Assembly: GCF_001194135.2 (NCBI RefSeq)
Contig: NC_068986.1
Span: 99,639,480 to 99,676,046, forward strand
Length of the DNA stretch: 36,567 nucleotides
Source: Octopus bimaculoides
Lineage: Eukaryota
Reading direction: 5' to 3'
A program made the translations under genes and the position numbers. The notes beneath the pieces were generated by a model, which saw nothing but the letters and a program-made list of their open reading frames with translations, was not told where the DNA came from and ran no database searches. Below, in pieces: positions 1,399 through 34,663 of this stretch. Positions within the stretch are counted from its first letter, which is position 1. Each line of letters starts with the position of its first letter.

Positions 1399-2200
1399 AT
1401 CATGCCTAGAGCCGATCAGATCCACCAGAGCTCTCCATCACTAGCAATTCCGTGCCAGCATTTCGGCATTATGCAAGATGACGTCGAGACTCGGGAGCCT
1501 ATGTTGTTCACTGGGGAGAAGGTATTGACGTTGTGTTCTCCGCATTTGCCAGTTTTTGTCAATGTATAAAGTCTGAGTGGAAGCGCAATGGCCCAGTGGT
1601 TAGGTCATAGGATCGCGGTTTCGATTCCCGGACTAGACGTTGTGAGTGTTTATTGAGCGAAAACACCTAAAAGCTCCACGAGGCTCCAGCAGGAGATGGT
1701 GGCGAACCCTGCTGTACTCTTTCACCACAACTTTCTCTCACTCTTACTTCCTATTTCTGTTGTGCCTGTAATTCAATGGGTCAGCCTTGTCACACTGTGT
1801 CACGCTGAATATCTCCGAGAACTACGTTAAGGGTACANNNNNNNNNNCCTATTTCTGTTGTGCCTGTAATTCAATGGGTCAGCCTTGTCACACTGTGTCA
1901 CGCTGAATATCTCCGAGAACTACGTTAAGGGTACACGTGTCTGTGGAGTGCTCAGCCACTTGCACGTTAATTTCACGAGCAGGCTGTTCCGTTGATCGGA
2001 TCAACTGGAACCCTCGACGTCGTAAGCGACGGAGTGCCAACACACACAACGCATAAAGTCTGATACTCGTCTCACTGTGCGAAAGAAATTCTCGCATAAT
2101 CACACGATCTGCAATTAATAGCAGCCAAATATACCTCAAAACACAAACTATTGTCTTTAGAATGAGGTAAATCTTAGATGCATCCTCTCCACTAAAAACG
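1399..2200 (-). mobile_element. Degenerate RTE-like LINE 3' end, interrupted by a SINE
   Basis: After removing the SINE and one TSD the minus strand reads ...IMREFLSHSETSIRLYTLTKTGKCGE, then (frameshift) TQRQYLL...LARNC**WRALVDLIGSRHD. This resembles the RTE C-terminal pattern FLGH..R..LE.L..TGK.EG..RGRQR...WR. Confidence 0.45.
1577..2050 (+). mobile_element. SINE family B (tRNA-derived head), near full length, with 11-bp TSD
   Basis: Head ggaagcgcaatggcccagtggttagg...ggtttcgattcc (A/B-box-like); CAA/CA tail; TSD ataaagtctga at 1566-1576 and 2053-2063; homologous to 13076-13268 and 19036-19373. Confidence 0.92.
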
Positions 2201-2669: not shown

Positions 2670-3495
2670 TACTTTTATCTGATCAAGAAGTATCTGGACT
2701 GTTGCTATAGAAACGAAGCTAAAGTACGCAGAGTGAAGTCGCTCGAGACAGATTCACCTTGAACTCTGCTTTTAACGTTGTAGCTCATTTCCGTGGTTTA
2801 CAGTAGTGCTCGGAAGGAAGATGTGTAGCGTGTGAGCGTCGCATTGACCATGACAGAGAAAGTTGAGCAGAGAATCTGCATGGAATGTTGCCAAAAGCTT
2901 GGCGATACCTACTCAGAGGCCTACGCAAAGTTTTCAAAAAGTTTTCATCGCTCTCGACACAATCAAGGACAGTTTGTGCAACTGAAACCCGCGTGTTTCT
3001 TTCGTCAGCTGAAAGCAGTTTTGGCACAAACTTGGCAGACACGCATCTCGTACACAAATCTTCTGTGATAATGGACTGAACTCATCCGTAACTAATCTGC
3101 ACAGCCTCTGATATCTCACGGATGGTGATTCGACGATTTCTCCTCAGAGCTGCACGCATATTTGCAATGTTTTTCTCAGTTCTGCTGGTTGCGGGACTCC
3201 CAGGACGTTCGTCAACCTACAGAACTACTGCTACTCAAGTTTCTTGAATATTTTAAACTCCAGTTTCTCGCAAATTTAAATATTCATTGTCATTCACTAC
3301 GTCCAATTCACAAATTTGAATATTCCTTGCATTCACTGCGAGAATTCCATTCTCATGTGCAAAGTCTCTCACTTTCTCTTTTAAGCTTTCATTCGCTATT
3401 TCGAAAACCGATAGTTTGTTGTATTAATGAATACGTAATTTATTATTTATTGAATGAAATTTTTTTAAATACCCATATACTTTTTGATCGCGGGA
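2670..3495 (+). mobile_element. Internally deleted and inverted mariner relic
   Basis: Plus strand from 2850: MTEKVEQRICMECCQKLGDTYSEAYAK (mariner N-terminal HTH). Minus strand about 3210-2926: VDERPGSPATSRTEKNIANMRAALRRNRRITIREISEAVQISYG*VQSIITEDLCTRCVSAKFVPKLLSAD...DENFLKTL. TIR remnants gatcaagaagtat (2681-2693) and atactttttgatc (3477-3489). Confidence 0.85.
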
Positions 3496-5176: not shown

Positions 5177-6452
5177 TATGCGATGGGTAAATTGTTGTCA
5201 TTTTATATTTTTTTATTTCGCGCATGCACGCTTTTTGTCTGATTTTGTCGACTACACAGTATAGTAGGGTCAGTTTGGCAACGTTTGTGACAAAAACAGC
5301 ACCATGACGCAATTCACTCTGCCAGAAATTTGCAAATGACATGTTGTCCTGCTTGGCAGTGCGAACATTTCAGAGTATTTGGGTCTCAATCCGAGGACAG
5401 TGCAGAGGGTTCGGAAGAAGTTGGATCAGTCTAATGGTGAATACAAAGGTACGGCGGCACGGAAAACTCACTCTAATCGTTCTGGTAAGGAAAAAAGTCT
5501 CCTGAATTTGTTGGTGAGATCCAGGCCATAATTGACAACGATCCCTCCAAGCCAATCAGGTCTATCGCCAGGAACATGGGAGTTTCTGAGTTTCTTATCA
5601 GGCATGTAGTGCAGGAAGATATTCGGTAATCCTCGTATAAGATGAGAAAGGGCCAATATTTATCCCAAGCCATCAACAAGAGGAAAGACAGCGCTACGAA
5701 GCTTTTGGACAAACTCAAGCATTCCCTGCAACGGAACATTCTTTGGTCTTTCTCAGACAAGAAAAATTTCTGCCAGGATGAGGGTGTGAACACACAGAAC
5801 AACTGTTGCCTTGCCAATTCCCCAGAACATGTACCGATAGTGAAAAAAATCAAACATCCAGTCAACATCATGGTGTTTGGAGTGATTACTAGTGATGGCG
5901 ACGTTATGTCCCCATTCATCTTCCCACACGGCCTCAGGCTTAACACGGACCCTACATCATGTGCCCGGAGGGTGTAATGCAGCCCTGGGTCAAGAGAGCG
6001 GCTGCTGGATGACATTATATCTGACAACTGGACTCTGCAACATGCCACAAAAGCAGGAGAATCCAGTCATGATTGTCAGACAATTTCCGCGACCACATCA
6101 CTCCTAACATCTGGCCATCGAACTCATCAGACTGCAACCCCTTTGATTATTATGTGTGGGGCGCAGTTGAGTGAGAGACCAACAAAACTCGTTGAAATAC
6201 AAAAGATGAACTGAAGGCAAGGATTATGGCACCATTCACCAACTTAAACAAGGAGACCTCCAGAAGAGTTGCAGGAGATTCCAAAGTCATCTCGAGGCCA
6301 TGGTTGAAGCCAATGGCGATTTTATTGGATAAATTTACTCTTTGGTATTTCAAGATATTTTTATGTAATACTAGCAAACATATCTGCTAAATTGAGACGT
6401 CAGTGTTAATTTCATTTTTCCATAATTTAGACGACAATTTATTCACTGCACC

Positions 6453-11049: not shown

Positions 11050-12685
11050 TCAGGTTGAGTAAAAAGTAAGAAGCCATGGAGGATTTGTACCGGACTTTTG
11101 CAGAATTACTCTATAATCTTTTATTTGTTTCAGTCATTTGACTGCGGCCATGCTGGAGCGCTACTTTTAGTCGAACAAATCGACCCCAGTATTCATTCTA
11201 TGTAAGCCTAGTATGTATTCTATCGGCCTCTTTTGCCGAACCACTAAGTTACGGAGACGTAAACACACCTGGGTCACTTGTCAAGTGATGATAGGGACAA
11301 ACACGGACACACAAACACACATACACACACACACACACACACGTATATATAAATATATATACATATATATACGATGGGTTTCTTTCAGTTTCCGTCAACC
11401 AAACCCAATCACAAGGCTTTGGTCGGCCCGAAGCAATAGTAGAAGACACTTGCCCAAGGTGCCAGGCAGTAGGACGGAACCCGGAACCATGTGGTTGGGA
11501 AGCAAGCTACTTACTACGCAGTCACTTGTCTGATAATACAGACATAGACTCGCCCAAATGCATCATTAAATTAAAATTGATATTTTTGGCACCGTTGCTA
11601 CAATCATCTGAAATGAAACTGTCAAAGCGCGATATTCGAGCAATTTTGCTATTCAACTTCAAGCAACGAGGTAAAGCAGCGAAAACTGCTAGCGATATCA
11701 TCGAAGCATTTGGCGAGGAAATGACCAGTGATTGGTCAGCTAAAAAATGGTTTAAACGATTCTAAGTGGAATGCTGAGCCTCGAAGATCGTGAGGGTAGT
11801 AGACGCACATCTGTCATCGATGACGGTTAATTAAAGTCCTTCATTGAGAATGACCCAGGTAAAACAACTCTAGAACTGGCAAAAGACGAAGAAGTTAGTC
11901 AGAAAACTGTCAGCAGCCATTTGCATGAGATCGGAAAATCAAAAACAACAACAAAAAAAAAGGTACTATTTGAATGAAAGTCAGAAAATGCGCAGATATG
12001 AAATTTGCTCGTCGCTTCTCCGTGACTAGACCGATTCATTTCTCGACAGTATTGTAACTTGCGATGAAAAGTGAATTCTGTACAATAATAATAAAAAAAA
12101 AAAAAAACATTGTTCGCAGTGGTTGGCTCAAAATGAAGCACCGAAAACCTTCCCTAAACCCGAGCTCTTCAAAAAGAAAGTTATGGTGACTGTTTGGTGG
12201 TGCATTTCTGGACTCATCCCCTATAATTTCTTAAAACCCGGAAAAGCCATTACTGCAGAAACATGTTACCGTAAAATTACCAAAATGAACGAAAAACTGC
12301 TGCTCCTCATTCCCAGACTGGTTAGCAGAAGACTCGTAATCATTATTCATAGCAATGCTCGACCACTCATTTTACGATTGACGCCCTAGAAGTTGAGAGA
12401 ACTTGGCTACGAAATTCTTCCCCAACCAGCTTATTCCCCAGACCTTTCTCCTACCGACTACCACTTTTCCAAATACCTTGATGGTTTCCTGAGAGAGAAT
12501 GAGTCCAAAAATCAAACCAATGCCGAAAGTTCGTTCAAAGAGTTCATCAGTTCCAGTACTTCACATTTTTATGTTAGCGGAATAAACAAACTTGTAACTC
12601 GTTGGCAAAAAAAATTCCGCATTGTTGAAATATATTGTGATTAATTTCATGTTTGAAAGCGTTGCTTACTTTTTACTCAACCTGA
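11050..12685 (+). mobile_element. Full-length defective mariner (Hsmar1/cecropia-like), copy 1, with a nested SINE
   Basis: Perfect 23-bp inverted termini including the TA TSD (tatcaggttgagtaaaaagtaag 11048-11070; cttactttttactcaacctgata 12665-12687). Relic MKLSKRDIRAILLFNFKQ..., IVTCDEK*, KKVMVTVWW, HSNARP, YSPDLSPTDYHF. Confidence 0.95.
11108..11525 (-). mobile_element. SINE family A inserted in the 5' UTR of mariner copy 1
   Basis: Homologous to 18459-18834 and 34241-34663; splits gcagaatt|gtctgataa, which is contiguous in mariner copy 2 (gaaattgtctgataa). Confidence 0.92.
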
Positions 12686-13031
12686 TATATCTATATATAC
12701 ATATATGCTTTCTATAATTTGCTACTGAAGCAATATTATTCCTCAGGACCTAAAGTGTTGGTGCAGTGAATTTTACAGTCATCTTTATTGGAAACTCTCT
12801 GCTGAGGAAAGCTGACAGCAACTGCGACGATTTCGATTAAACCAAATAGATCTAATGAATTGAACCCATTTTGCTAACAACTTTTCAGCCACGGGTCACT
12901 TTTGAGCTTTTGGAATGTATTCAAGTAAAAACAAAACATATACATGTATATGTATGTATATATACCTATATNNNNNNNNNNNNNNNNNNNNNNNNNNNNN
13001 NNNNNTATACATGCATGCATACATACACACA

Positions 13032-13075: not shown

Positions 13076-13268
13076 TGTTGTTGTTGTTGGCACTCTGTTG
13101 CTTACGACGTCGAGGGTTCCAGTTGATCCGATCAACGGAACAGCCTGCTCGTGAAATTAACGTGCAAGTGGCTGAGCACTCCACAGACACGTGTACCCTT
13201 AACGTAGTTCTCGGGGATATTCAGCGTGACACAGTGTGACAAGGCTGACCCTTTGAATTACAGGCACA
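13076..13268 (-). mobile_element. SINE family B, 3' half only
   Basis: Near-identical to the reverse complement of about 1860-2045; embedded in ATAC/CA repeats. Confidence 0.92.
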
Positions 13269-13449: not shown

Positions 13450-14175
13450 TTAAAGGCCACATTTAAAGCATCGTGGAACTCTGCCTTCTACCCATACTCT
13501 CAGTACTATTTCTCCTGACGACACCGTCTCCACCAAATTTTCCAGCTGCTTCGCTTCCGCTTGTATGCTGATTTCCAATGTTTTTCCACTATATCTTCCT
13601 TCCTCCGTCTATATAGCTTGGAGGACAGCCACCTCCTCCTCACTTCCAACGGGGACGGCTGCCGCAACCCAAGCCACTTCTACATCGAGTGGAATTACTT
13701 TTACCTTCCCCTTACAAGTTTTTCTTCCAAGGTACCTGGGTAGAAGAACTACCTCCTCCGTTTTTACAGTTGCACTCGCCAACCTCTTTGCCTCCTCCGC
13801 TGTCCTAAACTGGACAACCACCGTCCCATATCCATTTCCTTTCGCTGTGTATGTCACTTCCTTCGAAAGCCCCTTCAGTGCTTTTTCTACTTTTTCCATC
13901 TCCATCCGCTCCACCTTCCTTTTCTCCACTGCGTACACCTTGTAGGTAATGGTCTTCTTTTCCATATTTTCCATGACCCTTTTCGGGGGTAATAACTTTT
14001 ATTCACCGCCCACCTACTGTGTCATCTTACACAGCTCCTTCAGTCCGGCAATGTCCACCTCCCTTTTCTTCACCTCTGCAGCCTCAGCAAAACTCTTTAC
14101 TCTTTCCAAATGCTCGTCCATTCTATTTACCGCCTTAAAGAGCTCCTCCTCCGCTTAGGACAGCTCATAATCGCT
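13450..14175 (-). pseudogene. L1/Tx1-like non-LTR retrotransposon ORF1 relic (RRM-like region plus start of CCHC knuckle)
   Basis: One frame over 242 codons with 4 internal stops (14155, 14014, 13999, 13609). Motifs YGTVVVQFRTAEEAKRL, LLPRYLGRKTCKGKVKVIP and VWVEGRVPRCFKCGL*; GC-richer than flanks; upstream part lost in a gap. Confidence 0.7.
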
Positions 14176-14782
14176 NNNNNNNNNNNNNNNNNNNNNNNNN
14201 NNNNNNNNNNNNNNNNNNNNNNNNNNNNNNNNNNNNNNNNNNNNNNNNNNNNNNNNNNNNNNNNNNNNNNNNNNNNNNNNNNNNNNNNNNNNNNNNNNNN
14301 NNNNNNNNNNNNNNNNNNNNNNNNNNNNNNNNNNNNNNNNNNNNNNNNNNNNNNNNNNNNNNNNNNNNNNNNNNNNNNNNNNNNNNNNNNNNNNNNNNNN
14401 NNNNNNNNNNNNNNNNNNNNNNNNNNNNNNNNNNNNNNNNNNNNNNNNNNNNNNNNNNNNNNNNNNNNNNNNNNNNNNNNNNNNNNNNNNNNNNNNNNNN
14501 NNNNNNNNNNNNNNNNNNNNNNNNNNNNNNNNNNNNNNNNNNNNNNNNNNNNNNNNNNNNNNNNNNNNNNNNNNNNNNNNNNNNNNNNNNNNNNNNNNNN
14601 NNNNNNNNNNNNNNNNNNNNNNNNNNNNNNNNNNNNNNNNNNNNNNNNNNNNNNNNNNNNNNNNNNNNNNNNNNATATATATATACACTAAGGGTGATAA
14701 ATTGAATATTAATTTCAATTTAAAACCAGTGGTCTAGCATATTAAAAAAATCTGATCATTCAGAAAAATTGTATTACATGCG

Positions 14783-15227
14783 TATAAAAAGGGATGGCCA
14801 CTAAATGGACATCCAATATGCTAGAAAGAGGTCATCAACGATCCAACCACAAAGGAAAATAATGTTCACCAGAAAAAAAATCAGCAAACACCAGAGCAAA
14901 GGCGGGCAAGACAAAATGAAAAATATACAAAATATAGAATTAATCGTGTACCGGTTTCGCCATCAACTTTTTTACTTACGTAACAAACGTTCGTGGTTCG
15001 TCAGCACAATCGTTCTAAAATCAATATAATTTGCAGAACTATACATGAATTGTCTTCGTAAAATTTGACGTGTGTACAGTTCTACCGATTACATTGGGGT
15101 TATTTTCAAATGTCTCAGCTCCGGCGCTGAATTTTTTTCTGGAGAACATTTTTTTCTATGTGGTTGGGTCGTTGACGACCTCTTTCTAGCATATTGGATG
15201 TCCAGTGAGTGGTTATCCCTTCTTATA
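14783..15227. mobile_element. MITE-like fold-back element with about 102-bp TIRs, TA-flanked
   Basis: 14783-14885 matches the reverse complement of 15126-15227 (shared core tggacatccaatatgctagaaagaggtc); about 240-bp non-coding interior. Confidence 0.8.
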
Positions 15228-15297
15228 TGTATATATATATATATATATACATATTTGTTTTGCAAGATTTTTGATGTGAAATCGTGTGTTGAAACAG

Positions 15298-15642
15298 ATG
15301 TTGTTGTACTTGGGGATGGTCATATTGCCAGTTTAGCCAATAAAAACATACGCACTGTATATTTGGTGTTAATTTGCTTCAGCTTTATATTACATTAATC
15401 TTAATCTTATTTCGGCCAGAGTTCTAACCTTGCTAACTTCAGTTAGCAAGGTGAGACACACATAAGAAAGAAGGAAACAAAGGACCACTGATGAGGTCAC
15501 AGAAGTGTGACGAAAGAACTCTGGCCGAAATAAGATTAAGATTAATGTAATATAAAGCTGAAGCAAATTAACACCAAATATACAGTGCGTATGTTTTTAT
15601 TGGCTAAACTGGCAATATGACCATCCCCAAGTACAACAACAT
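15298..15642. repeat. Perfect 128-bp inverted repeat (15298-15425 / 15515-15642) with a structured 89-bp spacer
   Basis: Arms read as exact reverse complements; the ORF track shows the same peptide tail [32 protein letters not shown] on both strands. Confidence 0.97.
15482..15526 (+). ncRNA. Minimal type I hammerhead-ribozyme-like motif (possibly Penelope-associated)
   Basis: GGACCA-CUGAUGA-G-GUCACA(GAAG)UGUGAC-GAA-AG(AA)CU-C-UGGCC: core CUGANGA and GAAA, 6-bp stem II, 2-bp stem III, CUC triplet, 5-bp bulged stem I. One extra G after A9; activity untested. Confidence 0.55.
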
Positions 15643-15737
15643 GTATATATATATTTTTACATATACACATATATATGTATATATATGCATATATATGAAT
15701 ATATATATACATGTATATATATATGTATATATATCCA

Positions 15738-15780
<43 letters not shown>

Positions 15781-18032
15781 NNNNNNNNNNNNNNNNNNNN
15801 NNNNNNNNNNNNNNNNNNNNNNNNNNNNNNNNNNNNNNNNNNNNNNNNNNNNNNNNNNNNNNNNNNNNNNNNNNNNNNNNNNNNNNNNNNNNNNNNNNNN
15901 NNNNNNNNNNNNNNNNNNNNNNNNNNNNNNNNNNNNNNNNNNNNNNNNNNNNNNNNNNNNNNNNNNNNNNNNNNNNNNNNNNNNNNNNNNNNNNNNNNNN
16001 NNNNNNNNNNNNNNNNNNNNNNNNNNNNNNNNNNNNNNNNNNNNNNNNNNNNNNNNNNNNNNNNNNNNNNNNNNNNNNNNNNNNNNNNNNNNNNNNNNNN
16101 NNNNNNNNNNNNNNNNNNNNNNNNNNNNNNNNNNNNNNNNNNNNNNNNNNNNNNNNNNNNNNNNNNNNNNNNNNNNNNNNNNNNNNNNNNNNNNNNNNNN
16201 NNNNNNNNNNNNNNNNNNNNNNNNNNNNNNNNNNNNNNNNNNNNNNNNNNNNNNNNNNNNNNNNNNNNNNNNNNNNNNNNNNNNNNNNNNNNNNNNNNNN
16301 NNNNNNNACACACACACACACACACACATATGTAAGTATGTATATATATATATGTGAGAAAGATTTCCAAAATATCTCTACGAGTGTCTACATATGTATA
16401 GAGAAATTTGACAGAACACATTATTTATGCTTTTTTGAAAATTTTCTCATTTATAGCTTATATTTTTTTATTTTACTGTTTAAATACTCTATTACTGTTA
16501 CATTTCGATTATTATGACAGCTGAATCAATCAAACCGACCTATATTTTCAAGTTCTCCAACAAACACATTTAAAAAAAAATATTCATATTCGTTGCGAAA
16601 ATAGCTTTAGACAGCCAATGCCATTGCAACAAAATGGCACATAAAACCAGCAATCAATCTCAGTGATGTATTTGCAATTGATGGTAAAACATATTTAGTC
16701 GAAAATATATATGAAATCCTATGTGATAAATGGAAGCGATGAAACATTTGGAAACCGAATATCGGCATTAGCAAGAAGATATGAATAACTACAGCAGTAT
16801 TTTACTAATGTGATTCATAAATTCTAATGGGGTTTCTACTGAGAAACACTAATCGGGCTATTGATTTATGATTAAATATCTATTCTCTTTGTGTTTGTTT
16901 TCATTAGTATTTTCATAAAGTAAGAAAATAAATATCAAACGCATAATAAAGTTAGTTATACTATGATGTCAGTCTTTCTGGCAATAATTGCTTTCGTTTT
17001 ATGCTTCACTCGGAGATATTGAATGATTCTATAATTTTCAGTCCCATGGTCTTTGGAGAGTAGTAAAGAGATCATTTACTATATTGGCTGCCCCCACTCG
17101 TCTCATCATGTCTCAATAACAAACGTGACAAATTATACAGGTCGTGATAATCGTCGCTGGGTCAACTAACAGTAAGTATAGTTTGCTAAATGTAATGGAA
17201 AGCAAATACCAAAATAAAACAACTCGCGAATATAAATAGTAAAAGAAATATTTTCAATCTATTTGTGTTGAGAGAAGCGCTTCGACTGCAGATTCATTCA
17301 GCCGTAGAGAAAGGAAATCGAAGTTGTTGGAATATTCCTACAATATTTGTTTTAGTATTGCAGATAATGTGACAGTAATTGAATACATATAAATAAAGAA
17401 TAAAATTAAATATACAGATATCTTGTTAGGTTCTGTCAATGCTTTCTTTGTAAAGACATATTGAGAATAAATTACATATAAAAATAATTTACAGAAATAC
17501 GCATTACGGAATCTTAATATTATTTTGACAGATCAGATGGAAAGAGCTCTCTCGGTTAATCTGAAACACAAGCACCAAGCAAGCAATTGATAATTGGTTC
17601 GAATAATGTCGGCAGAAATCTTGTCTTTTTTTTAAACTTAAATTCTCACGTATTCGTATTCAAATTTATACACTCGGTTTCACTACACACACAAACACAC
17701 ACATACACACACACACGCACACACACACACACACATACACGTATGTATATGAAATAATTAGTTCGTTTTAAGTCAAATTATATAATAAAATAACCGCAGT
17801 ATGATTCAACACTTGATTGAGTCACAAAGCAATATATAAATTAATACGTCAAACCTATCTATACGCCACCTACTTATCATTCACTTAGATCTTAGATCTT
17901 AGCTGTTCCATAAACGACTTCTCAAAGAATATGTGAAGCTAAAATGAACCGAAATAAGGCACATTCTAACGAAAGCAAGCAACCCAAAACTTCAAAATCA
18001 AATTTGACCTGTAAACAATTTACATGCGCACG

Positions 18033-18172
<140 letters not shown>

Positions 18173-18458
18173 CACATATATATAGATCACAGATGAAATC
18201 CAAATATTCTCTGTATAGAAAACACTTATTCGTGCTCAAAAGATTCATACTTAGACTCCCATGTCTTTACAGGGGATCATTCCACAAGCTAAAGGAAAGG
18301 CTGTAAGAAGGATCATGTTGAACTGGTACAGAAGCAATTAAGCGGATAAACAAATTAGACACATAAAATATGTTAAATATATTGAATACATCAAATATAA
18401 AATATGTGTATATGTATAGGAGAGAAAGCAAAAAGTGGAAATTTCGAGATGAATATAT

Positions 18459-18834
18459 ACTCTTTTACTTGTTTCAGTCATTTGACTGTGGCCATGCTGG
18501 AGCACCGCCTTTAGTCGAGCAAATCAACCCCGGGACTTATTCTTTGTAAGCCCAGTACTTATTCATTCTATCGGTCTCTTTTGCCGAACCGCTAAGTTAC
18601 GGGGACATAAACACACCAGCATCGGTTGTTAAGCAATGCTAGGGGGACAAACACAGACACATACACACACACATATATATATATATACATATATACGACG
18701 GGCTTCTTTCAGTTTCCATCTACCAAATCCACTCACAAGGCTTTGGTCGGCCCGAGGCTATAGTAGAAGACACTTGCCCAAGGTGCCACGCAGTGGGACT
18801 GAACCTGGAACCATGTGGTTGGTAAGCAAGCTAC
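18459..18834 (-). mobile_element. SINE family A, head truncated by an assembly gap
   Basis: actcttttacttgtttcagtcatttgactg...gccgaaccgctaagttacgggg...(CA/TA)n...gacgggcttctttcagtttcc...ggtaagcaagctac. Confidence 0.93.
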
Positions 18835-19035
18835 NNNNNNNNNNNNNNNNNNNNNNNNNNNNNNNNNNNNNNNNNNNNNNNNNNNNNNNNNNNNNNNNNN
18901 NNNNNNNNNNNNNNNNNNNNNNNNNNNNNNNNNNNNNNNNNNTACACAGAATACAAACGATAGGGAGAATGGAAGGGGAGGAAGAGAGGTGTTATAAGTC
19001 GAGCAGCTGTTTCTTTGGATTCGGCGATCCATACT

Positions 19036-19373
19036 GTTGTTCGCACTCCGTCGCTTACGACGTCGACGGTTCCAGTTGATCCGATCAACGGAACAGCCCG
19101 CTCGTGAAATTAACGTGCAAGGGGCTGAGCACTCAACAGAAACGTGTACCCTTAACGTAGTTCTCGGGGATATTCAGCGTGACACAGGAAGAAAGAATGA
19201 GAGAAAGTTGTGGTGAAAGAGTACAGCAGGGTTCGCCACCATCCCCTGCCGGAGCCTCATGGAGCTTTAGGTGTTTTCGCTCAATAAACACTCACAACAT
19301 CCGGTCTTGGAATCGAAACCGCGATCCTATGACCGCGAGTCCGCTGCCCTAATCACTGGGCCATTGCGCCTCC
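19036..19373 (-). mobile_element. SINE family B with intact tRNA-like head and a 44-bp internal deletion
   Basis: Reverse complement begins ggaggcgcaatggcccagtgattagggcagcggactcgcggtcataggatcgcggtttcgattcc; possible decayed TSD cgatccatact / cgatcgatgct. Confidence 0.92.
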
Positions 19374-20890: not shown

Positions 20891-22072
20891 GAAATTGTCT
20901 GATAAAACAGACATAGACTTGCCCAAATGCATCAATAAATTAAAATTGAGATTTTTTTCACTGTTGCTGCAATTATCTGAAACGGAACTGTCAAAGCTCG
21001 ATATTCAAGCAATTTTACTATTCCACTACGAAAAAGCAGCTGAAACTGTTTGTGATATCAAAGAAACGTTTGGTGAGGAAATGATCAGTGAATGGTCAGC
21101 TCGGAAATGATTTAAACGATTTCGCAGTGGGGAGCTGTGCCTTGAAGACTGTGGGCGTAGTGGACGCCCATCTGTCATCGATGACGGTTAATTAAAGACC
21201 GTCATTGAGAAAGACCCACGTAAAATCACTCGAGTACTGGCAAAACATTTACAAGTTAGCCAGAAAACTGACTGCAAACATTTGCATGCGATCGGAAAAT
21301 CACCCCCTCCCCCCAAAAAGACTTTTTGACAAATGGATACGATTTGAATAAAAGTCAGAAAATGCGTTGATATGAAATTTGCTCGTAGCTTCTCCGTGAC
21401 GAGACCGATTCATTTCTCGACAGTATTGTAACTTGCGATGACAATTGAATTCAGTACAATAATAAAAAAACGTTCTTCGCAGTGGTTGGATCAAAATGAA
21501 GCACCGAAAACCTTCCCTAAATCCGAGCTCTTCAAAAAGAAAGTTATGGTGACTGTTTGGTGGTGTACTGCTGGAGTCATCCCCTATAATTTCGTAAAAA
21601 CCGGAAAACCCATTACTGCAGAAACATGTTACCATAAAATTACCAAAATGAACGAAAGATTGCTATTCCTCATTCCCAGACTGGTTAGCAGAAGACGCTA
21701 AATCATTCGTCATGGCAATGCTCGACCACTCATTTCACTAACAAGGCTCCAGAAGTTTACAGAGCTTGGTTACGAGGTTCTTCCCCCACTCAGCTTATTC
21801 CCCAGACCTTTCTCCTATCGACTACCACATTTTCAAGCACCTTGATGGTTTTTTGCATGAGAAAAATTTCGAAAATCAAACCGATGCTGACAGTGAGTTC
21901 AAATTTCCATAACTCCAGAATATTGTTACTGGAATAAACAAACTTGTAACTCATTGGCAAAAATGTTGTAATTGTAATGGTACATTTTTGATGAATAAAA
22001 TTTCCGCATTGTTGAAATATATTGTGATGAATTTCATGTTTGAAAACGCTTCTTGCTTTTTACTCAACCTGA
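20891..22072 (+). mobile_element. Defective mariner, copy 2 (same subfamily as 11050-12685), 5' TIR missing
   Basis: Colinear with copy 1 from ttgtctgataa to ctttttactcaacctga; FKRFRSGELCLEDCGRSGRPSVIDDG*LK; KKVMVTVWW; HGNARP. Confidence 0.95.
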
Positions 22073-22094
22073 TCTATCTATCTATCTATCTATA

Positions 22095-22165
<71 letters not shown>

Positions 22166-25055: not shown

Positions 25056-25441
25056 TGCATTATATGGATAATTTATCCTCATCACGCTGTTTATAGCATT
25101 ATCACGCGTTTGAGAAATAAATTTATTTCTGTATCTTACAATACATCTCAACGCTTCTAAAAAAATAAAAAAAAAATAAAAAGTTTACTTTCATCGTAAG
25201 TGGAATTTAACGTTAGCGTCTTATGAAGCTAAATTTATAAGTCGTAAAATTGCAGAAGAGTTCGTTGCGGGGCAGTTTGGTTTAATGGTAAAACATTTGA
25301 CATGTAATCACAGATATATGAGTTCGAGTCTCATGGCTGGCCGGTAACGTATTTATCTGCATTATATGGATAATTTATCCTGATCACTCTATTTATAGCA
25401 TTATCACGCGTTTGCAGAAATAAATTCATTTCTGCATCTTA
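25056..25441 (+). repeat. 83/84-bp direct repeats (25056-25138 and 25358-25441) bracketing a tRNA-like sequence
   Basis: tgcattatatggataatttatcct.atcac.ct.tttatagcattatcacgcgtttg.agaaataaatt.atttctg.atctta; about 6 differences. Confidence 0.92.
25271..25342 (+). tRNA. tRNA-Thr(UGU)-like sequence, probably a pseudogene
   Basis: 72-nt cloverleaf: acceptor GGCAGUU/GGCUGGC (1 mismatch, 2 GU), D stem GUUU/AAAC, anticodon stem UUUGA/UCACA with loop CAUGUAA (U33 replaced by A), perfect T arm AUGAG-UUCGAGU-CUCAU; A box TGGTTTAATGG and B box GTTCGAGTC. Confidence 0.7.
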
Positions 25442-29589: not shown

Positions 29590-30856
29590 CACAAGTTGGT
29601 AATGTTTTATAACTACAAAGAATACTTTCATTCATCAATGTATGCACCCATATAGTCAATACACTTTTGCCATTTCAACGGTAGCTTGTCTAGCCCAGAA
29701 CTGTAAAAGCCTGGCAATCTAGAGTCAATAAAATCTTGGAAGTCTTGTTTTACAGCATCATCAGAATTAATTTTTTTTCTTATCAAAATCTTATACAAAT
29801 TCTGGAAGAAGTGGCAGTCAGCGGGGTCAAGATCAGGTGAATATGGTGGATGATGGAGAACTTCCAACATCAACTCCTCTATCTTTACCAATGCCATTTT
29901 TGCGATGTGTAGTCTGGCGTTGTCTTGCAATAAAATCGGAGTGGAACTCTTGACTAATCTAGGTTGTTTTATGTAAGTTTCTGCATCATTTGGTCCAGCT
30001 GGCTGCAGTATACTTCGGCCGTGATTGATAAAGCAGGTTTGATGAAATCATAATGGATCACATCTGCGCAAGACCACCAAACACACTTCCATCAGCGTCT
30101 TTTGCTGACATTCTTCTTTTTGGACTGTGTTTTGGTAGCTAGCCTTTGTCCAACCATTGTGCTGAACGTTTACAGTTGTTGTATTGGATCCATTTATCAT
30201 CACATGTTAGAATTCCATTAAAAGATTATTCATTTTTGTGACGAGAAAGTAGCATAATCCAGGCTTCGAAACGTTGCTGTTTCTGACTTTCATTGAGTTC
30301 ATGTGGATCCCACTTATCTAACTTTTTAACTTTACCGATTTGAACTAGGTACGTTAATATTGTTAGCTTGCTAATACCAAACAACATTGATAATTCATGG
30401 GGAATTTGAAATGAATCTGACTCGACGGGGGCTTTCATTTCGTCATTATCCACCTTTGTTTCTGGTCGACCGCGTTGCTCATTTGTGAGGTCAAAGTTAC
30501 CAGAACGAAATTTTGCAAACCAATTTCATACTGTCCGCTGTGTAATAACATTAGAATGAAATACTCCATTAATATTCTGAGCTGTCTGTGATGCTGTATT
30601 TCCAAGAAAGAACTCATATTTCAAAACTACGAATTTCCGACTTATCCATCTCTAAACAAAAATAGCAAAAAAAAAAAAAAAAAAAAAAAAAACGATTTTT
30701 AAATACTTTGTAAAGCGTAAAATAGGTTAGAATAAAGAAATAGATGTGTCAGCTTTTTAACAAAAAATAAAGGTTGTCAAAATATAATAATGGCGCAAAA
30801 TGAGCACCTGTCAAATTTTACCATATACCTTACTACAAATTTCATACTTGACGACC

Positions 30857-34240: not shown

Positions 34241-34663
34241 TTCTTTTACTGTTTTATTTGTTTCAGTCATTTGACTGCGGCCATGCTGGAGCACCGCCTT
34301 TAGTCGAAGAAATTGACCACAGGACTTATTGTTTGCAAGCCTAGTACTTATTCTATCGGTCTCTATGGCCGAACCGCTAGGTTACGGGGACGTAAACACA
34401 TCAGCATCGGTTGTCAAGCGATGTTATGGGACAAACACTCACACACACACACACAGACATATACACACACACACATACACACATATATATACATATATAC
34501 GACGGGCTTCTTTTAGTTTCCGTCTACCAAATCGACTCACAAGGCTTTGGTCGGCCCGAGGCTATAGTAGAAGACATTTGCCCAAAGTGCCATGCAGTGG
34601 GACTGAACCCGGAACCATGTGGTTAGTAAGCGAGCTACTTACCACACAGCCACTCCAGCGTCT
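34241..34663 (-). mobile_element. SINE family A, essentially full length
   Basis: Complete head (reverse complement gctggagtggctgtgtggtaag...ggttccgggttcagtcc), CORE-like tgggcaaatgtctt segment, internal (CA/TA)n and 3' part. Confidence 0.93.

What the first reader, a model, noticed from the sequence alone, without database searches (positions are those of the whole stretch)
15482..15526. Hammerhead-ribozyme-like motif locked by a perfect cis-antisense arm
Seen: all parts of a minimal type I hammerhead in order (stem I GGACCA/UGGCC with one bulge, CUGAUGA, stem II GUCACA/UGUGAC, GAAA, 2-bp stem III, C17), predicting cleavage after 15521. The upstream 128-bp arm is complementary starting exactly at A15.1 (15515), so it would sequester stem III, the cleavage site and the 3' strand of stem I while leaving the core unpaired. 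A second register (stem II GGUCA/UGGCC then GAAA) overlaps. Established: Penelope-like elements carry minimal hammerheads with very short stem III, and a natural viroid hammerhead tolerates an extra base between A9 and G10.1. Inference: a retroelement-derived ribozyme whose activity would depend on transcription start, i.e. a possible conformational switch. This may equally be an accidental product of inversion.
Basis: partly seen in the sequence, partly recalled or inferred. Interest (0 to 1): 0.85.

Follow-up and report, generated by a model that had tools for sequence, protein, structure and literature searches.

The report
Penelope-type hammerhead in inverted retroelement stub
The hammerhead-like motif is real and matches the minimal hammerheads carried by Penelope-like retrotransposons, and the perfect "antisense arm" is most simply the inverted, truncated twin copy that these elements often leave when they insert into TA repeats, so this is an ordinary dead retroelement fragment, not a new riboswitch.

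Summary
At 15482-15526 (+) lies GGACCA/CUGAUGA/g/GUCACA-GAAG-UGUGAC/GAA/A-GAAC-U/C/UGGCC. A perfect 128-bp inverted repeat (15298-15425 / 15515-15642) has its right arm starting at A15.1.

No Rfam hammerhead model scores it. However, its departures from the canonical motif are the published hallmarks of Penelope-like element (PLE) minimal hammerheads:
- one extra base between A9 and G10.1
- a G10.1-C11.1 pair
- a 6-bp helix II
- a short helix I
- a tiny helix III

The experimentally active Anolis PLE hammerhead has the same plan under my descriptor. Chance expectation is about 1e-4 to 1e-5 per window.

The locus also fits published PLE insertion architecture. Two 5'-truncated copies lie head-to-head with their 3' ends outward. 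One side carries a roughly 43-nt extension ("tail"). The ends are A/C-rich. The hammerhead lies 121 nt from the copy's 3' end. TA microsatellite flanks both sides.

The proposed "conformational switch" is a by-product of that geometry. No family copies, reverse transcriptase or reads were available, so family membership remains inferred.

Verdict: a new member of a known kind, of low to moderate interest.

The parts
15224..15254 (.). Left remnant of the (TA)n microsatellite, the presumed insertion target
   Evidence: TRF finds a TA array of 15.5 copies. Sequence.
15255..15297 (-). One-sided extension of about 43 nt attached to the 3' end of the inverted copy; a candidate PLE 'tail'. On the element's sense strand it reads CTGTTTCAACACACGATTTCACATCAAAAATCTTGCAAAACAA and is A/C-rich.
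   Evidence: It is unique sequence between the TA array and the left arm. A+C is 0.65-0.75. PLE tails of 30-40 bp present at only one end are described in PMC8557442, and as the stretch between two reverse-transcription start sites in PMC11167929. The assignment is inferred.
15298..15425 (-). Shorter, inverted, 5'-truncated copy (128 nt) and left arm of the perfect inverted repeat. It covers the element from A15.1 of the hammerhead to the 3' end and lacks the catalytic core.
   Evidence: 128/128 complementary to 15515-15642.
15426..15642 (+). Longer 5'-truncated copy (217 nt) of the putative PLE 3' region (pLTR end). It contains the hammerhead. Its last 128 nt form the right arm.
   Evidence: There is no other copy in the window.
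15427..15452 (+). 11-bp hairpin with a UUCA loop at the junction of the two copies. It is either part of the element or a junction palindrome.
   Evidence: Fold. Self-complementary blast hit 15423-15456.
15482..15487 (+). Hammerhead helix I, 5' strand (GGACCA, A15484 bulged)
   Evidence: Pair probability 0.93-0.99 in arm-free RNA.
15488..15495 (+). Catalytic box C3-A9 (CUGAUGA) plus one extra G between A9 and G10.1
   Evidence: The extra nucleotide is a conserved PLE min-HHR trait. PAc has a U at this position.
15496..15511 (+). Helix II: six Watson-Crick pairs GUCACA/UGUGAC, opened by G10.1-C11.1, with loop GAAG
   Evidence: Pair probability above 0.9.
15512..15521 (+). G12 A13 A14, then A15.1-G-AA-C-U16.1 (minute helix III), then C17. 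Predicted cleavage is after 15521.
   Evidence: A monomer helix III is sterically impossible. The 15.2-16.2 positions are G-C (palindromic) but the AA loop is not palindromic.
15522..15526 (+). Helix I, 3' strand (UGGCC)
15617..15642 (+). A/C-rich 3' end of the copy (ATGACCATCCCCAAGTACAACAACAT), the presumed reverse-transcription start region. The ATG opens a frame that stays open through the tail on the inverted copy ([23 protein letters not shown]).
   Evidence: The PAc reverse-transcription start lies in ACAACACA, 82-89 nt after the cut. Here the copy ends 121 nt after the cut. The ORF reading is speculative and found no homologue.
15644..15780 (.). Right-hand imperfect (TA)n microsatellite running into the assembly gap at 15781-16307
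   Evidence: TRF finds 68.5 copies at 79% matches. Gap map.

Best explanation
[quoted passage not shown] It sits in a (TA)n microsatellite of an animal genome.

Two cDNA copies of the same RNA 3' region were laid down head-to-head, one primed from each cut DNA strand:
- a 217-nt copy on the + strand (15426-15642)
- a 128-nt copy on the - strand (15298-15425), which carries a 43-nt 'tail' (15255-15297) because it started at a more distal reverse-transcription start site

Their shared part is the perfect 128-bp inverted repeat.

The longer copy retains the element's minimal type I hammerhead (15482-15526). In intact, tandemly arranged PLEs this motif lies in the pseudo-LTR about 100 nt upstream of the reverse-transcription start. 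It is thought to process the element's RNA, cleaving poorly on its own and better as a dimer or with the element's protein.

At this locus the ribozyme is a lone copy, because the twin is truncated exactly at A15.1 and has no core. Its helix III loop is not palindromic. It is therefore most likely inactive or barely active.

The masking of its 3' half by the upstream arm is a by-product of the insertion geometry. The truncation point may have been helped by reverse transcriptase stalling at the base of helix II.

What is shown and what is inferred:
- Shown: the motif, the repeat, the flanks, the predicted folds and the chance rarity.
- Inferred from the literature: PLE origin, dual-strand priming, tail identity and inactivity.
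For: 1. The motif has every invariant hammerhead core base in order.

2. It shares the extra features that Cervera & de la Pena report for PLE min-HHRs: a nucleotide between 9 and 10.1, G10.1-C11.1, a helix II of 6-8 bp, a helix I of 4-5 bp, and a helix III of 1-2 bp with a 2-4 nt loop and complementary 15.2-16.2.

3. Positive control. The same descriptor run on the tandem junction of the biochemically active Anolis PLE (PAc) returns CUGAGGA + U + a 6-bp helix II + GAA + A-CG-U + C17 + a 3-bp helix I. This is the same plan.

4. Chance expectation is 1e-4 to 1e-5 per window and about 1-9 per genome. Metazoan genomes are reported to carry thousands of PLE min-HHRs.

5. Architecture published for PLEs (PMC8557442): strong 5' truncation, an adjacent inverted 5'-truncated copy forming inverted repeats, a 30-40 bp tail at one end only, the HHR near the 3' end, and a bias for (TA)n. 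All five have a counterpart here.

6. Mechanism. The PAc protein cuts and extends both DNA strands at AT-rich DNA and starts reverse transcription in an A/C-rich region 82-89 nt past the HHR cut. The tail is the stretch between two start sites. Here the copy ends in ...GTACAACAACAT, 121 nt past the cut, and the tail is also A/C-rich.

7. Arm-free RNA folds into helices I and II.

8. Penelope elements and Rfam hammerhead hits are reported in a cephalopod genome. The window looks like an invertebrate draft, probably a cephalopod.
Against: - No Rfam hammerhead model matches, even at E<=10 on 71 nt.
- There is no second copy of the element in the window.
- The window holds no PLE reverse transcriptase or GIY-YIG coding remnant.
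- No related sequence was found in the searchable collections or papers.
- So family membership, core conservation and helix covariation are untested.
- Loop 3 (AA) is not palindromic, unlike the published rule.
- Helix I needs a bulge.
- The tail is 43 nt rather than 30-40.
- The HHR-to-end distance is 121 nt, against 82-89 in PAc.
- The repeat sits in a 1.1-kb contig between two gaps of a short-read scaffold, so the junction itself could be misassembled.
- The descriptor was fitted after the fact.
Confidence: 0.58

Rival explanations
1. The hammerhead is a genuine PLE-derived motif, but the inverted repeat is not biological. A short-read assembler or gap-closer joined PLE-containing reads in opposite orientation, or collapsed two loci, next to a microsatellite and a gap.
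For: - The contig is only 1,106 bp and lies between N-gaps at 14176-14674 and 15781-16307.
- The arms are 100% identical.
- Craig et al. state that PLE tandem/inverted structures often cause problems in short-read assemblies.
Against: - The structure has exactly the orientation (3' ends outward), one-sided tail and TA flanks expected of real PLE insertions.
- The junction at 15425/15426 has no long shared k-mer that would drive a false join; only a 26-34 nt palindrome lies there.
- No reads were available to test this.
Confidence: 0.15
2. The hammerhead-like string is a chance match inside an unrelated inverted repeat, such as a foldback or MITE-type DNA element, a local inverted duplication, or a hairpin-RNA locus.
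For: - Rfam hammerhead models do not match.
- The only Rfam hits are generic long-hairpin miRNA models far below threshold: MIR4208 at 58.9 bits against a gathering score of 140, and MIR2655.
- A few chance hits per genome are expected under my relaxed descriptor, and the number of windows screened is unknown.
- A MITE-like inverted repeat lies just upstream at 14783-14885 / 15126-15227.
Against: - The per-window chance is 1e-4 to 1e-5.
- The unscored extras (insertion after A9, G10.1-C11.1, helix lengths) match the PLE class and the PAc control.
- No target-site duplication flanks the repeat...GAAACAG | arm ... arm | GTATATAT.
- Position relative to the repeat's outer end, the A/C-rich ends and the TA target all fit PLEs.
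Confidence: 0.12
3. The unit is not a truncated autonomous PLE. It is a copy of a short non-autonomous hammerhead element (non-LTR retrozyme or SINE-like derivative of a PLE pLTR) mobilised in trans by PLE enzymes.
For: - Animal type I HHRs are mostly in non-autonomous retrozymes (PMC7229834).
- Retrozymes are proposed to derive from PLE pLTRs (bioRxiv 10.64898/2026.07.22.740005).
- No RT remnant lies nearby.
Against: - Retrozymes are defined by tandem repeats of about 150-400 bp. Only TA arrays are found here.
- Retrozyme HHRs are usually canonical (helix I 6 bp, helix II 4 bp), whereas this one is of the min-HHR type.
- With one locus the two cannot really be separated.
Confidence: 0.1
4. 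One reading: a selected conformational switch in which the upstream antisense arm gates ribozyme activity according to the transcription start site.
For: - The arm starts exactly at A15.1.
- When present, the arm buries helix III, the cleavage site and the helix I 3' strand in a -247.5 kcal/mol duplex.
- Arm-free RNA adopts helices I and II.
Against: - The geometry is explained without selection by PLE insertion.
- A lone min-HHR with a non-palindromic helix III is not expected to cleave well in any context.
- PAc needs its protein to cleave.
- There is no evidence of transcription, conservation or other copies.
- A 128-bp perfect duplex is an irreversible trap rather than a switch.
Confidence: 0.04

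Closest known systems
Minimal hammerheads of Penelope-like elements (min-HHR; Cervera & de la Pena 2014, PMC4209133)
   Same: - Type I topology.
- Full CUGANGA...GAAA core.
- An unpaired nucleotide between A9 and G10.1.
- A G10.1-C11.1 pair.
- A 6-bp helix II.
- A 4-5 bp helix I with no obvious loop-loop contacts.
- A vestigial helix III with complementary 15.2-16.2.
- Occurrence as a single dispersed motif in a truncated element.
   Different: - The 2-nt loop 3 (AA) is not palindromic, so the dimeric helix III would carry two A-A mismatches.
- Helix I has a bulge.
- No link to an RT/EN ORF or to a consensus family could be shown here.
PAc (Poseidon, Anolis carolinensis) hammerhead and insertion mechanism (PMC11167929)
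   Same: - Same motif plan under one descriptor.
- The HHR lies about 100 nt upstream of an A/C-rich reverse-transcription start (ACAACA-type sequence).
- An AT-rich target.
- Both DNA strands are used as primers.
- An optional tail lies between two start sites.
   Different: - In PAc the ORF starts at A9-U-G10.1 and the cut-to-start distance is 82-89 nt. Here it is 121 nt (164 nt with the tail), and the only ATG is 96 nt after the cut.
- There is no sequence similarity.
- PAc cleavage was measured. Nothing was measured here.
PLE 'complex tandem/inverted' insertions with tail and (TA)n bias (Craig et al. 2021, PMC8557442)
   Same: - An inverted 5'-truncated copy abutting a direct copy.
- Inverted repeats whose outer ends are element 3' ends.
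- An extension on one side only.
- Microsatellite flanks that hide any target-site duplication.
- The locus sits at an assembly trouble spot.
   Different: - In the typical figure the inverted copy precedes a pLTR plus a full-length ORF. Here both copies are short stubs.
- The (TA)n bias was described mainly for Naiads, which lack canonical HHRs.
Non-LTR retrozymes (Cervera & de la Pena 2020, PMC7229834)
   Same: A type I hammerhead in AT-rich non-coding repeat DNA of an invertebrate, with a proposed evolutionary link to PLE pLTRs.
   Different: - There is no tandem array.
- Retrozyme HHRs are canonical and usually detectable with Rfam Hammerhead_1. This one is not.
Extra nucleotide in the chrysanthemum chlorotic mottle viroid (+) hammerhead (De la Pena & Flores 2001, as cited in PMC4209133)
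   Same: One additional residue between A9 and G10.1 is tolerated in a natural hammerhead.
   Different: That is a viroid type III ribozyme and the extra base is A. From memory, and unverified here, a G at that position was detrimental in that context.

Membership tests
Hammerhead ribozyme (any type) | Conserved core C3 U4 G5 A6 N7 G8 A9 ... G12 A13 A14, A15.1-U16.1, H17 | tested here: met
   CUGAUGA 15488-94, GAA 15512-14, A15515, U15520, C15521. One inserted G lies after A9.
Hammerhead ribozyme (any type) | Three helices around the core | tested here: inconclusive
   Helix I (5 bp plus a bulge) and helix II (6 bp) are predicted with probability above 0.9 in arm-free RNA. Helix III (2 bp with a 2-nt loop) cannot form within one molecule.
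Hammerhead ribozyme (any type) | Match to a curated covariance model (Rfam hammerhead families) | tested here: not met
   No hammerhead hit at gathering score, nor at E<=10 on 451 nt or 71 nt.
Hammerhead ribozyme (any type) | Site-specific self-cleavage after position 17 | not testable with these tools
   Needs in vitro transcription and cleavage assays.
PLE minimal hammerhead (min-HHR) | [quoted passage not shown] | tested here: met
   G15495. The trait is listed in PMC4209133. PAc has U.
PLE minimal hammerhead (min-HHR) | G10.1-C11.1 pair, long helix II (6-8 bp) and short helix I (4-5 bp) | tested here: met
   G15496-C15511; helix II is 6 Watson-Crick pairs; helix I is 5 bp.
PLE minimal hammerhead (min-HHR) | Palindromic 15.2-16.2, and palindromic loop 3 when present (dimer formation) | tested here: not met
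   G15.2-C16.2 are complementary, but loop 3 is AA. AGAACU is not self-complementary. Cofold shows no clean intermolecular helix III.
PLE minimal hammerhead (min-HHR) | Belongs to a genomic family of copies with covariation in helices I and II | not testable with these tools
   There is no other copy in the window. The source genome is not searchable. Public scans were empty.
Penelope-like element insertion | RT plus GIY-YIG ORF, or linkage to one | tested here: not met
   tblastn of the PAc protein against the window gave only a spurious hit at E=3.4, and a motif regex was negative. Absence is expected for a 217-nt stub, so this does not exclude PLE derivation.
Penelope-like element insertion | 5' truncation with an adjacent inverted 5'-truncated copy, 3' ends outward | tested here: met
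   15298-15425 (-) and 15426-15642 (+) share the terminal 128 nt. The criterion comes from PMC8557442.
Penelope-like element insertion | 30-40 bp tail at one end only | tested here: inconclusive
   A 43-nt A/C-rich unique stretch (15255-15297) lies on the left side only. Without other copies it cannot be told from ordinary flank.
Penelope-like element insertion | AT-rich or (TA)n target, and an A/C-rich reverse-transcription start downstream of the HHR | tested here: met
   TA arrays at 15224-15254 and 15644-15780. The copy ends in GTACAACAACAT, 121 nt after the cut.
Non-LTR retrozyme | Tandem repeats of about 150-400 bp, each with a type I HHR | tested here: not met
   TRF finds only period-2 and period-6 arrays. 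There are no direct repeats of the unit.
MITE / foldback DNA transposon | Terminal inverted repeats flanked by a target-site duplication, with multiple copies | tested here: not met
   The flanks ...GAAACAG and GTATATAT... show no duplication. There is no other copy in the window.
miRNA / hairpin-RNA precursor | Match to a curated precursor family | tested here: not met
   MIR4208 scores 58.9 bits against a gathering score of 140, and MIR2655 scores 36.7 against 122. These are generic long-hairpin matches.

The most novel reading that the evidence does not exclude
The head-to-head PLE stub works as a direction-dependent RNA device.
- Transcription entering from the left yields a perfect 128-bp dsRNA hairpin. 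This would be a ready substrate for Dicer or ADAR, and so a source of small RNAs or editing directed against the PLE family's hammerhead/3' region.
- Transcription starting inside the spacer yields a foldable hammerhead.

A stranger formal variant also exists. The junction reconstitutes a split type III-like hammerhead: U15425 as U16.1, A15426 as H17, the hairpin 15427-15452 as helix I, the core and helix II in place, and the 128-bp stem as helix III. It is interrupted only by a 35-nt linker before C3.
Probability: 0.05. Interest if true: 0.55.

Novelty: new member of a known kind. Interest (0 to 1): 0.3.

Why it matters
The value is mostly practical.
- A textbook-looking hammerhead that Rfam models miss can still be assigned by the published PLE min-HHR hallmarks and by insertion architecture.
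- Perfect inverted repeats beside TA microsatellites and assembly gaps in invertebrate drafts can be a signature of PLE integration rather than regulatory hairpins.
- If the family proves young and abundant in the source genome, it would add an active-looking hammerhead-bearing PLE lineage to this taxon, probably a cephalopod.
- It would also give a natural example of cDNA truncation at the base of the ribozyme fold.

It does not open a new kind of mechanism.

Tried and rejected
- **Rfam.** I ran it at gathering score on the whole window, then at E<=10 on 451 nt and 71 nt. There was no hammerhead hit. I could not run a known PLE HHR through the same tool as a positive control.
- **Second register.** GGUCA/UGGCC followed by GAAA at 15527-30 is rejected because nothing downstream pairs with GGACCA as helix I.
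- **Type III-like reading using the 128-bp stem as helix III.** Rejected as canonical because 35 nt separate helix I from C3.
- **Independent assemblies of the locus.** Exact-protein look-ups of ORFs 15390-15566(-) and 15072-15398(+) were not on record.
- **Exact 28-mer of the core.** No hits in metagenome, viral or prokaryote contigs or in papers.
- **Possible PLE ORF start** (MTIPKYNN..., 36 aa). It was too short for one tool and gave no hits in 1.84 billion representative proteins.
- **Neighbouring 121-aa ORF 13609-13974(-).** No homologue and only a sub-threshold Pfam hit.
- **PLE coding remnants in the window.** None found by motif regex or by tblastn with the PAc protein.
- **Supplements with PLE/HHR consensus sequences.** Those for the two key papers are not held, and Lunse et al. 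2017 is not held.
- **Sampling more of the source genome through repeat-encoded proteins.** I considered this and dropped it as too low-yield.
- **Organism.** I did not verify it. 'Octopus or cephalopod' rests on my memory of a SINE sequence.

Full report
**Context**

The window is a eukaryotic short-read scaffold.
- It has twelve N-gaps, most of them bordered by TA or CA microsatellites.
- It contains mariner-type transposase remnants.
- Several interspersed repeat families are present.
- The only Rfam hit above threshold is a tRNA.
- From memory, one repeat resembles an octopus SINE, so I suspect a cephalopod. I did not verify this.

The finding lies in a 1,106-bp contig (14675-15780) between two gaps.

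**Checking the observation**

The string at 15482-15526 (+) reads GGACCA CUGAUGA g GUCACA GAAG UGUGAC GAA A-GAAC-U C UGGCC. All invariant hammerhead positions are present and in type I order. There are three irregularities:
- an extra G between A9 and G10.1
- a bulged A in helix I
- a helix III of two pairs closed by two bases

The inverted repeat 15298-15425 / 15515-15642 is 128 nt, 100% complementary and separated by 89 nt.

ViennaRNA predicts the following:
- Helices I and II dominate the arm-free RNA, with pair probabilities above 0.9.
- The monomeric helix III is sterically forbidden.
- A transcript with both arms collapses into a -247.5 kcal/mol hairpin that buries everything from 15515 onward.

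Nothing downstream can form helix I with it, so I reject it.

**Is it more than chance?**

- A relaxed descriptor finds only this site on either strand of the window. The descriptor allows: the core, 0-1 inserted base, helix II of at least 4 bp opened by G-C, GAAA, 0-6 nt for helix III, UH, and helix I of at least 4 bp or 5 bp with one bulge.
- Forty megabases of first-order Markov sequence gave one hit for core + helix II + GAAA and no full hits.
- Importance sampling over 10 million planted cores gives 1.1e-4 full hits per window, or 1.7e-5 with a helix II of at least 6 bp. That is about 9 and about 1.4 per 2.7-Gb genome.

The motif is therefore not expected by chance in one window, but a handful per genome could arise. 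The descriptor was written after the fact, so the true rate is somewhat higher.

**The Rfam result**

No hammerhead family matches at gathering score, at E<=10 on 451 nt or on 71 nt. The only hits are generic long-hairpin miRNA models far below threshold. Taken alone this would argue against a ribozyme.

**What the irregularities mean**

Cervera & de la Pena 2014 (PMC4209133) defined the minimal hammerheads of Penelope-like elements (PLEs). They list features that were not in their search descriptor but emerged consistently:
- a conserved G10.1-C11.1 pair
- a larger helix II (6-8 bp)
- a helix III that is absent or only 1-2 bp, capped by a 2-4 nt palindromic loop, implying action as dimers

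The candidate meets all of these except the palindromy of its AA loop.

As a positive control I took the published consensus of the Anolis PLE 'PAc', whose hammerhead was shown to cleave, with C3/G8 mutants as controls (PMC11167929). I ran the same descriptor on its tandem junction. It returns CUGAGGA + U + a 6-bp helix II (G10.1-C11.1) + GAA + A-CG-U + C17 + a 3-bp helix I. This is the same plan as the candidate.

Metazoan genomes are reported to hold thousands of such motifs. Penelope elements and hammerhead hits are reported in a cephalopod genome. Given that, a PLE origin is much more likely than chance.

**The inverted repeat**

Craig et al. 2021 (PMC8557442) describe PLE insertions as follows:
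- They are strongly 5'-truncated.
- They often have an inverted 5'-truncated copy immediately adjacent, forming inverted repeats.
- They carry a 30-40 bp 'tail' at one end only.
- The HHR lies near the 3' end.
- They are biased toward (TA)n microsatellites, which hides target-site duplications.
- They are troublesome for short-read assemblies.

The PAc study adds mechanism:
- The protein cuts and extends both strands of AT-rich DNA.
- Reverse transcription starts internally in an A/C-rich region (ACAACACA), 82-89 nt past the hammerhead cut.
- The tail is the stretch between two alternative start sites.

The locus maps onto this point by point:

| Coordinates | Feature |
|---|---|
| 15224-15254 | (TA)n microsatellite |
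| 15255-15297 | 43-nt A/C-rich unique stretch on the left only |
| 15298-15425 (-) | inverted 128-nt copy |
| 15426-15642 (+) | 217-nt copy |
| 15644-15780 | imperfect (TA)n running into the gap |

The 217-nt copy has its hammerhead cut site 121 nt from an end reading ...GTACAACAACAT.

Both copies have their 3' ends outward, as expected if each cut DNA strand primed a cDNA on the same RNA region. The perfect identity of the arms then follows from a single, recent event. No target-site duplication is visible. There is no tandem repeat of retrozyme size.

The arm begins at A15.1 because that is where the shorter copy was truncated. This may be where reverse transcriptase met the base of helix II and the core, which is my inference.

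The twin has no catalytic core, so the locus holds a single min-HHR with a non-palindromic helix III. PLE min-HHRs cleave poorly even as dimers, and PAc needs its protein. The motif here is therefore probably an inactive relic.

The 'lock' is a by-product, and a 128-bp perfect duplex would be a trap rather than a reversible switch. I rate the switch hypothesis at about 4%.

**What remains untested**

I could not obtain any other copy of the element.
- There is none in the window.
- There is none in the searchable DNA collections, protein collections or papers.
- The window has no PLE coding remnant.

Conservation, covariation, linkage to an RT/GIY-YIG ORF and the reality of the assembled junction are therefore all open.

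I put about 0.75 on the motif being PLE-derived. I put 0.58 on the full explanation, which adds that the foldback is real and was born at integration.

The main rivals are:
- an assembly artefact of PLE copies (0.15)
- a chance motif in an unrelated foldback (0.12)
- a non-autonomous PLE-derived element rather than a truncated PLE (0.10)

**Verdict**

This is an unannotated member of a known class in a known type of insertion structure. Interest is low to moderate.

Noticed in passing
window 14783-14885 and 15126-15227: A second, older inverted repeat (103 nt, 88% identity, 240-nt spacer). It is bounded by TATAA-type sequence on both sides and abuts the left TA array. It looks like a MITE (Tc1/mariner-type TA target) or another foldback insertion. 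It has no hammerhead core.
   Followed up: partly
window 15423-15456: A small palindrome (11-bp stem, UUCA loop) sits exactly at the junction of the two inverted copies. With U15425, A15426 and the downstream core it formally mimics a type III hammerhead whose helix III is the 128-bp stem, apart from a 35-nt linker before C3.
   Followed up: partly
window 11112-11526, 18456-18834, 34247-34654 (partial copy 281-422): Three to four copies (82-86% identity) of a roughly 400-bp SINE-like repeat, each next to a CA/TG microsatellite. From memory it resembles an octopus SINE, which would make the source a cephalopod. This is unverified.
   Followed up: no
window 11526-12715 and 20895-22105; also 2785-3081(-), 5630-5974(+), 29631-30525(-): Decayed mariner/Mos1-type transposase copies: weak Pfam DDE_3 and HTH_48 hits, and a 1.1-kb pair at 82.5% identity.
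   Followed up: partly
window 25270-25343, flanked by 25056-25138 and 25358-25441: A tRNA-Thr(TGT), the only Rfam hit above threshold. It is bracketed by 84-bp direct repeats at 93% identity, which suggests it sits inside a duplicated or mobile unit rather than being a plain tRNA gene.
   Followed up: no
window 13609-13974 (-): A 121-aa ORF with an RRM-like GYGTVVVQF motif and a lysine/glutamate-rich N-terminus. It has no homologue in 5.8 billion proteins and only a sub-threshold Pfam hit. It could be an unannotated retroelement ORF1 or could be spurious.
   Followed up: partly
window 1603-2050, 13077-13268, 19035-19334: Another interspersed repeat family (93-97% identity). One copy is split by the 10-N gap at 1838-1847, with an 88-bp perfect duplication across the gap (1750-1837 = 1848-1935). 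That is a likely gap-closing artefact, and it shows the assembly does make local duplication errors.
   Followed up: no
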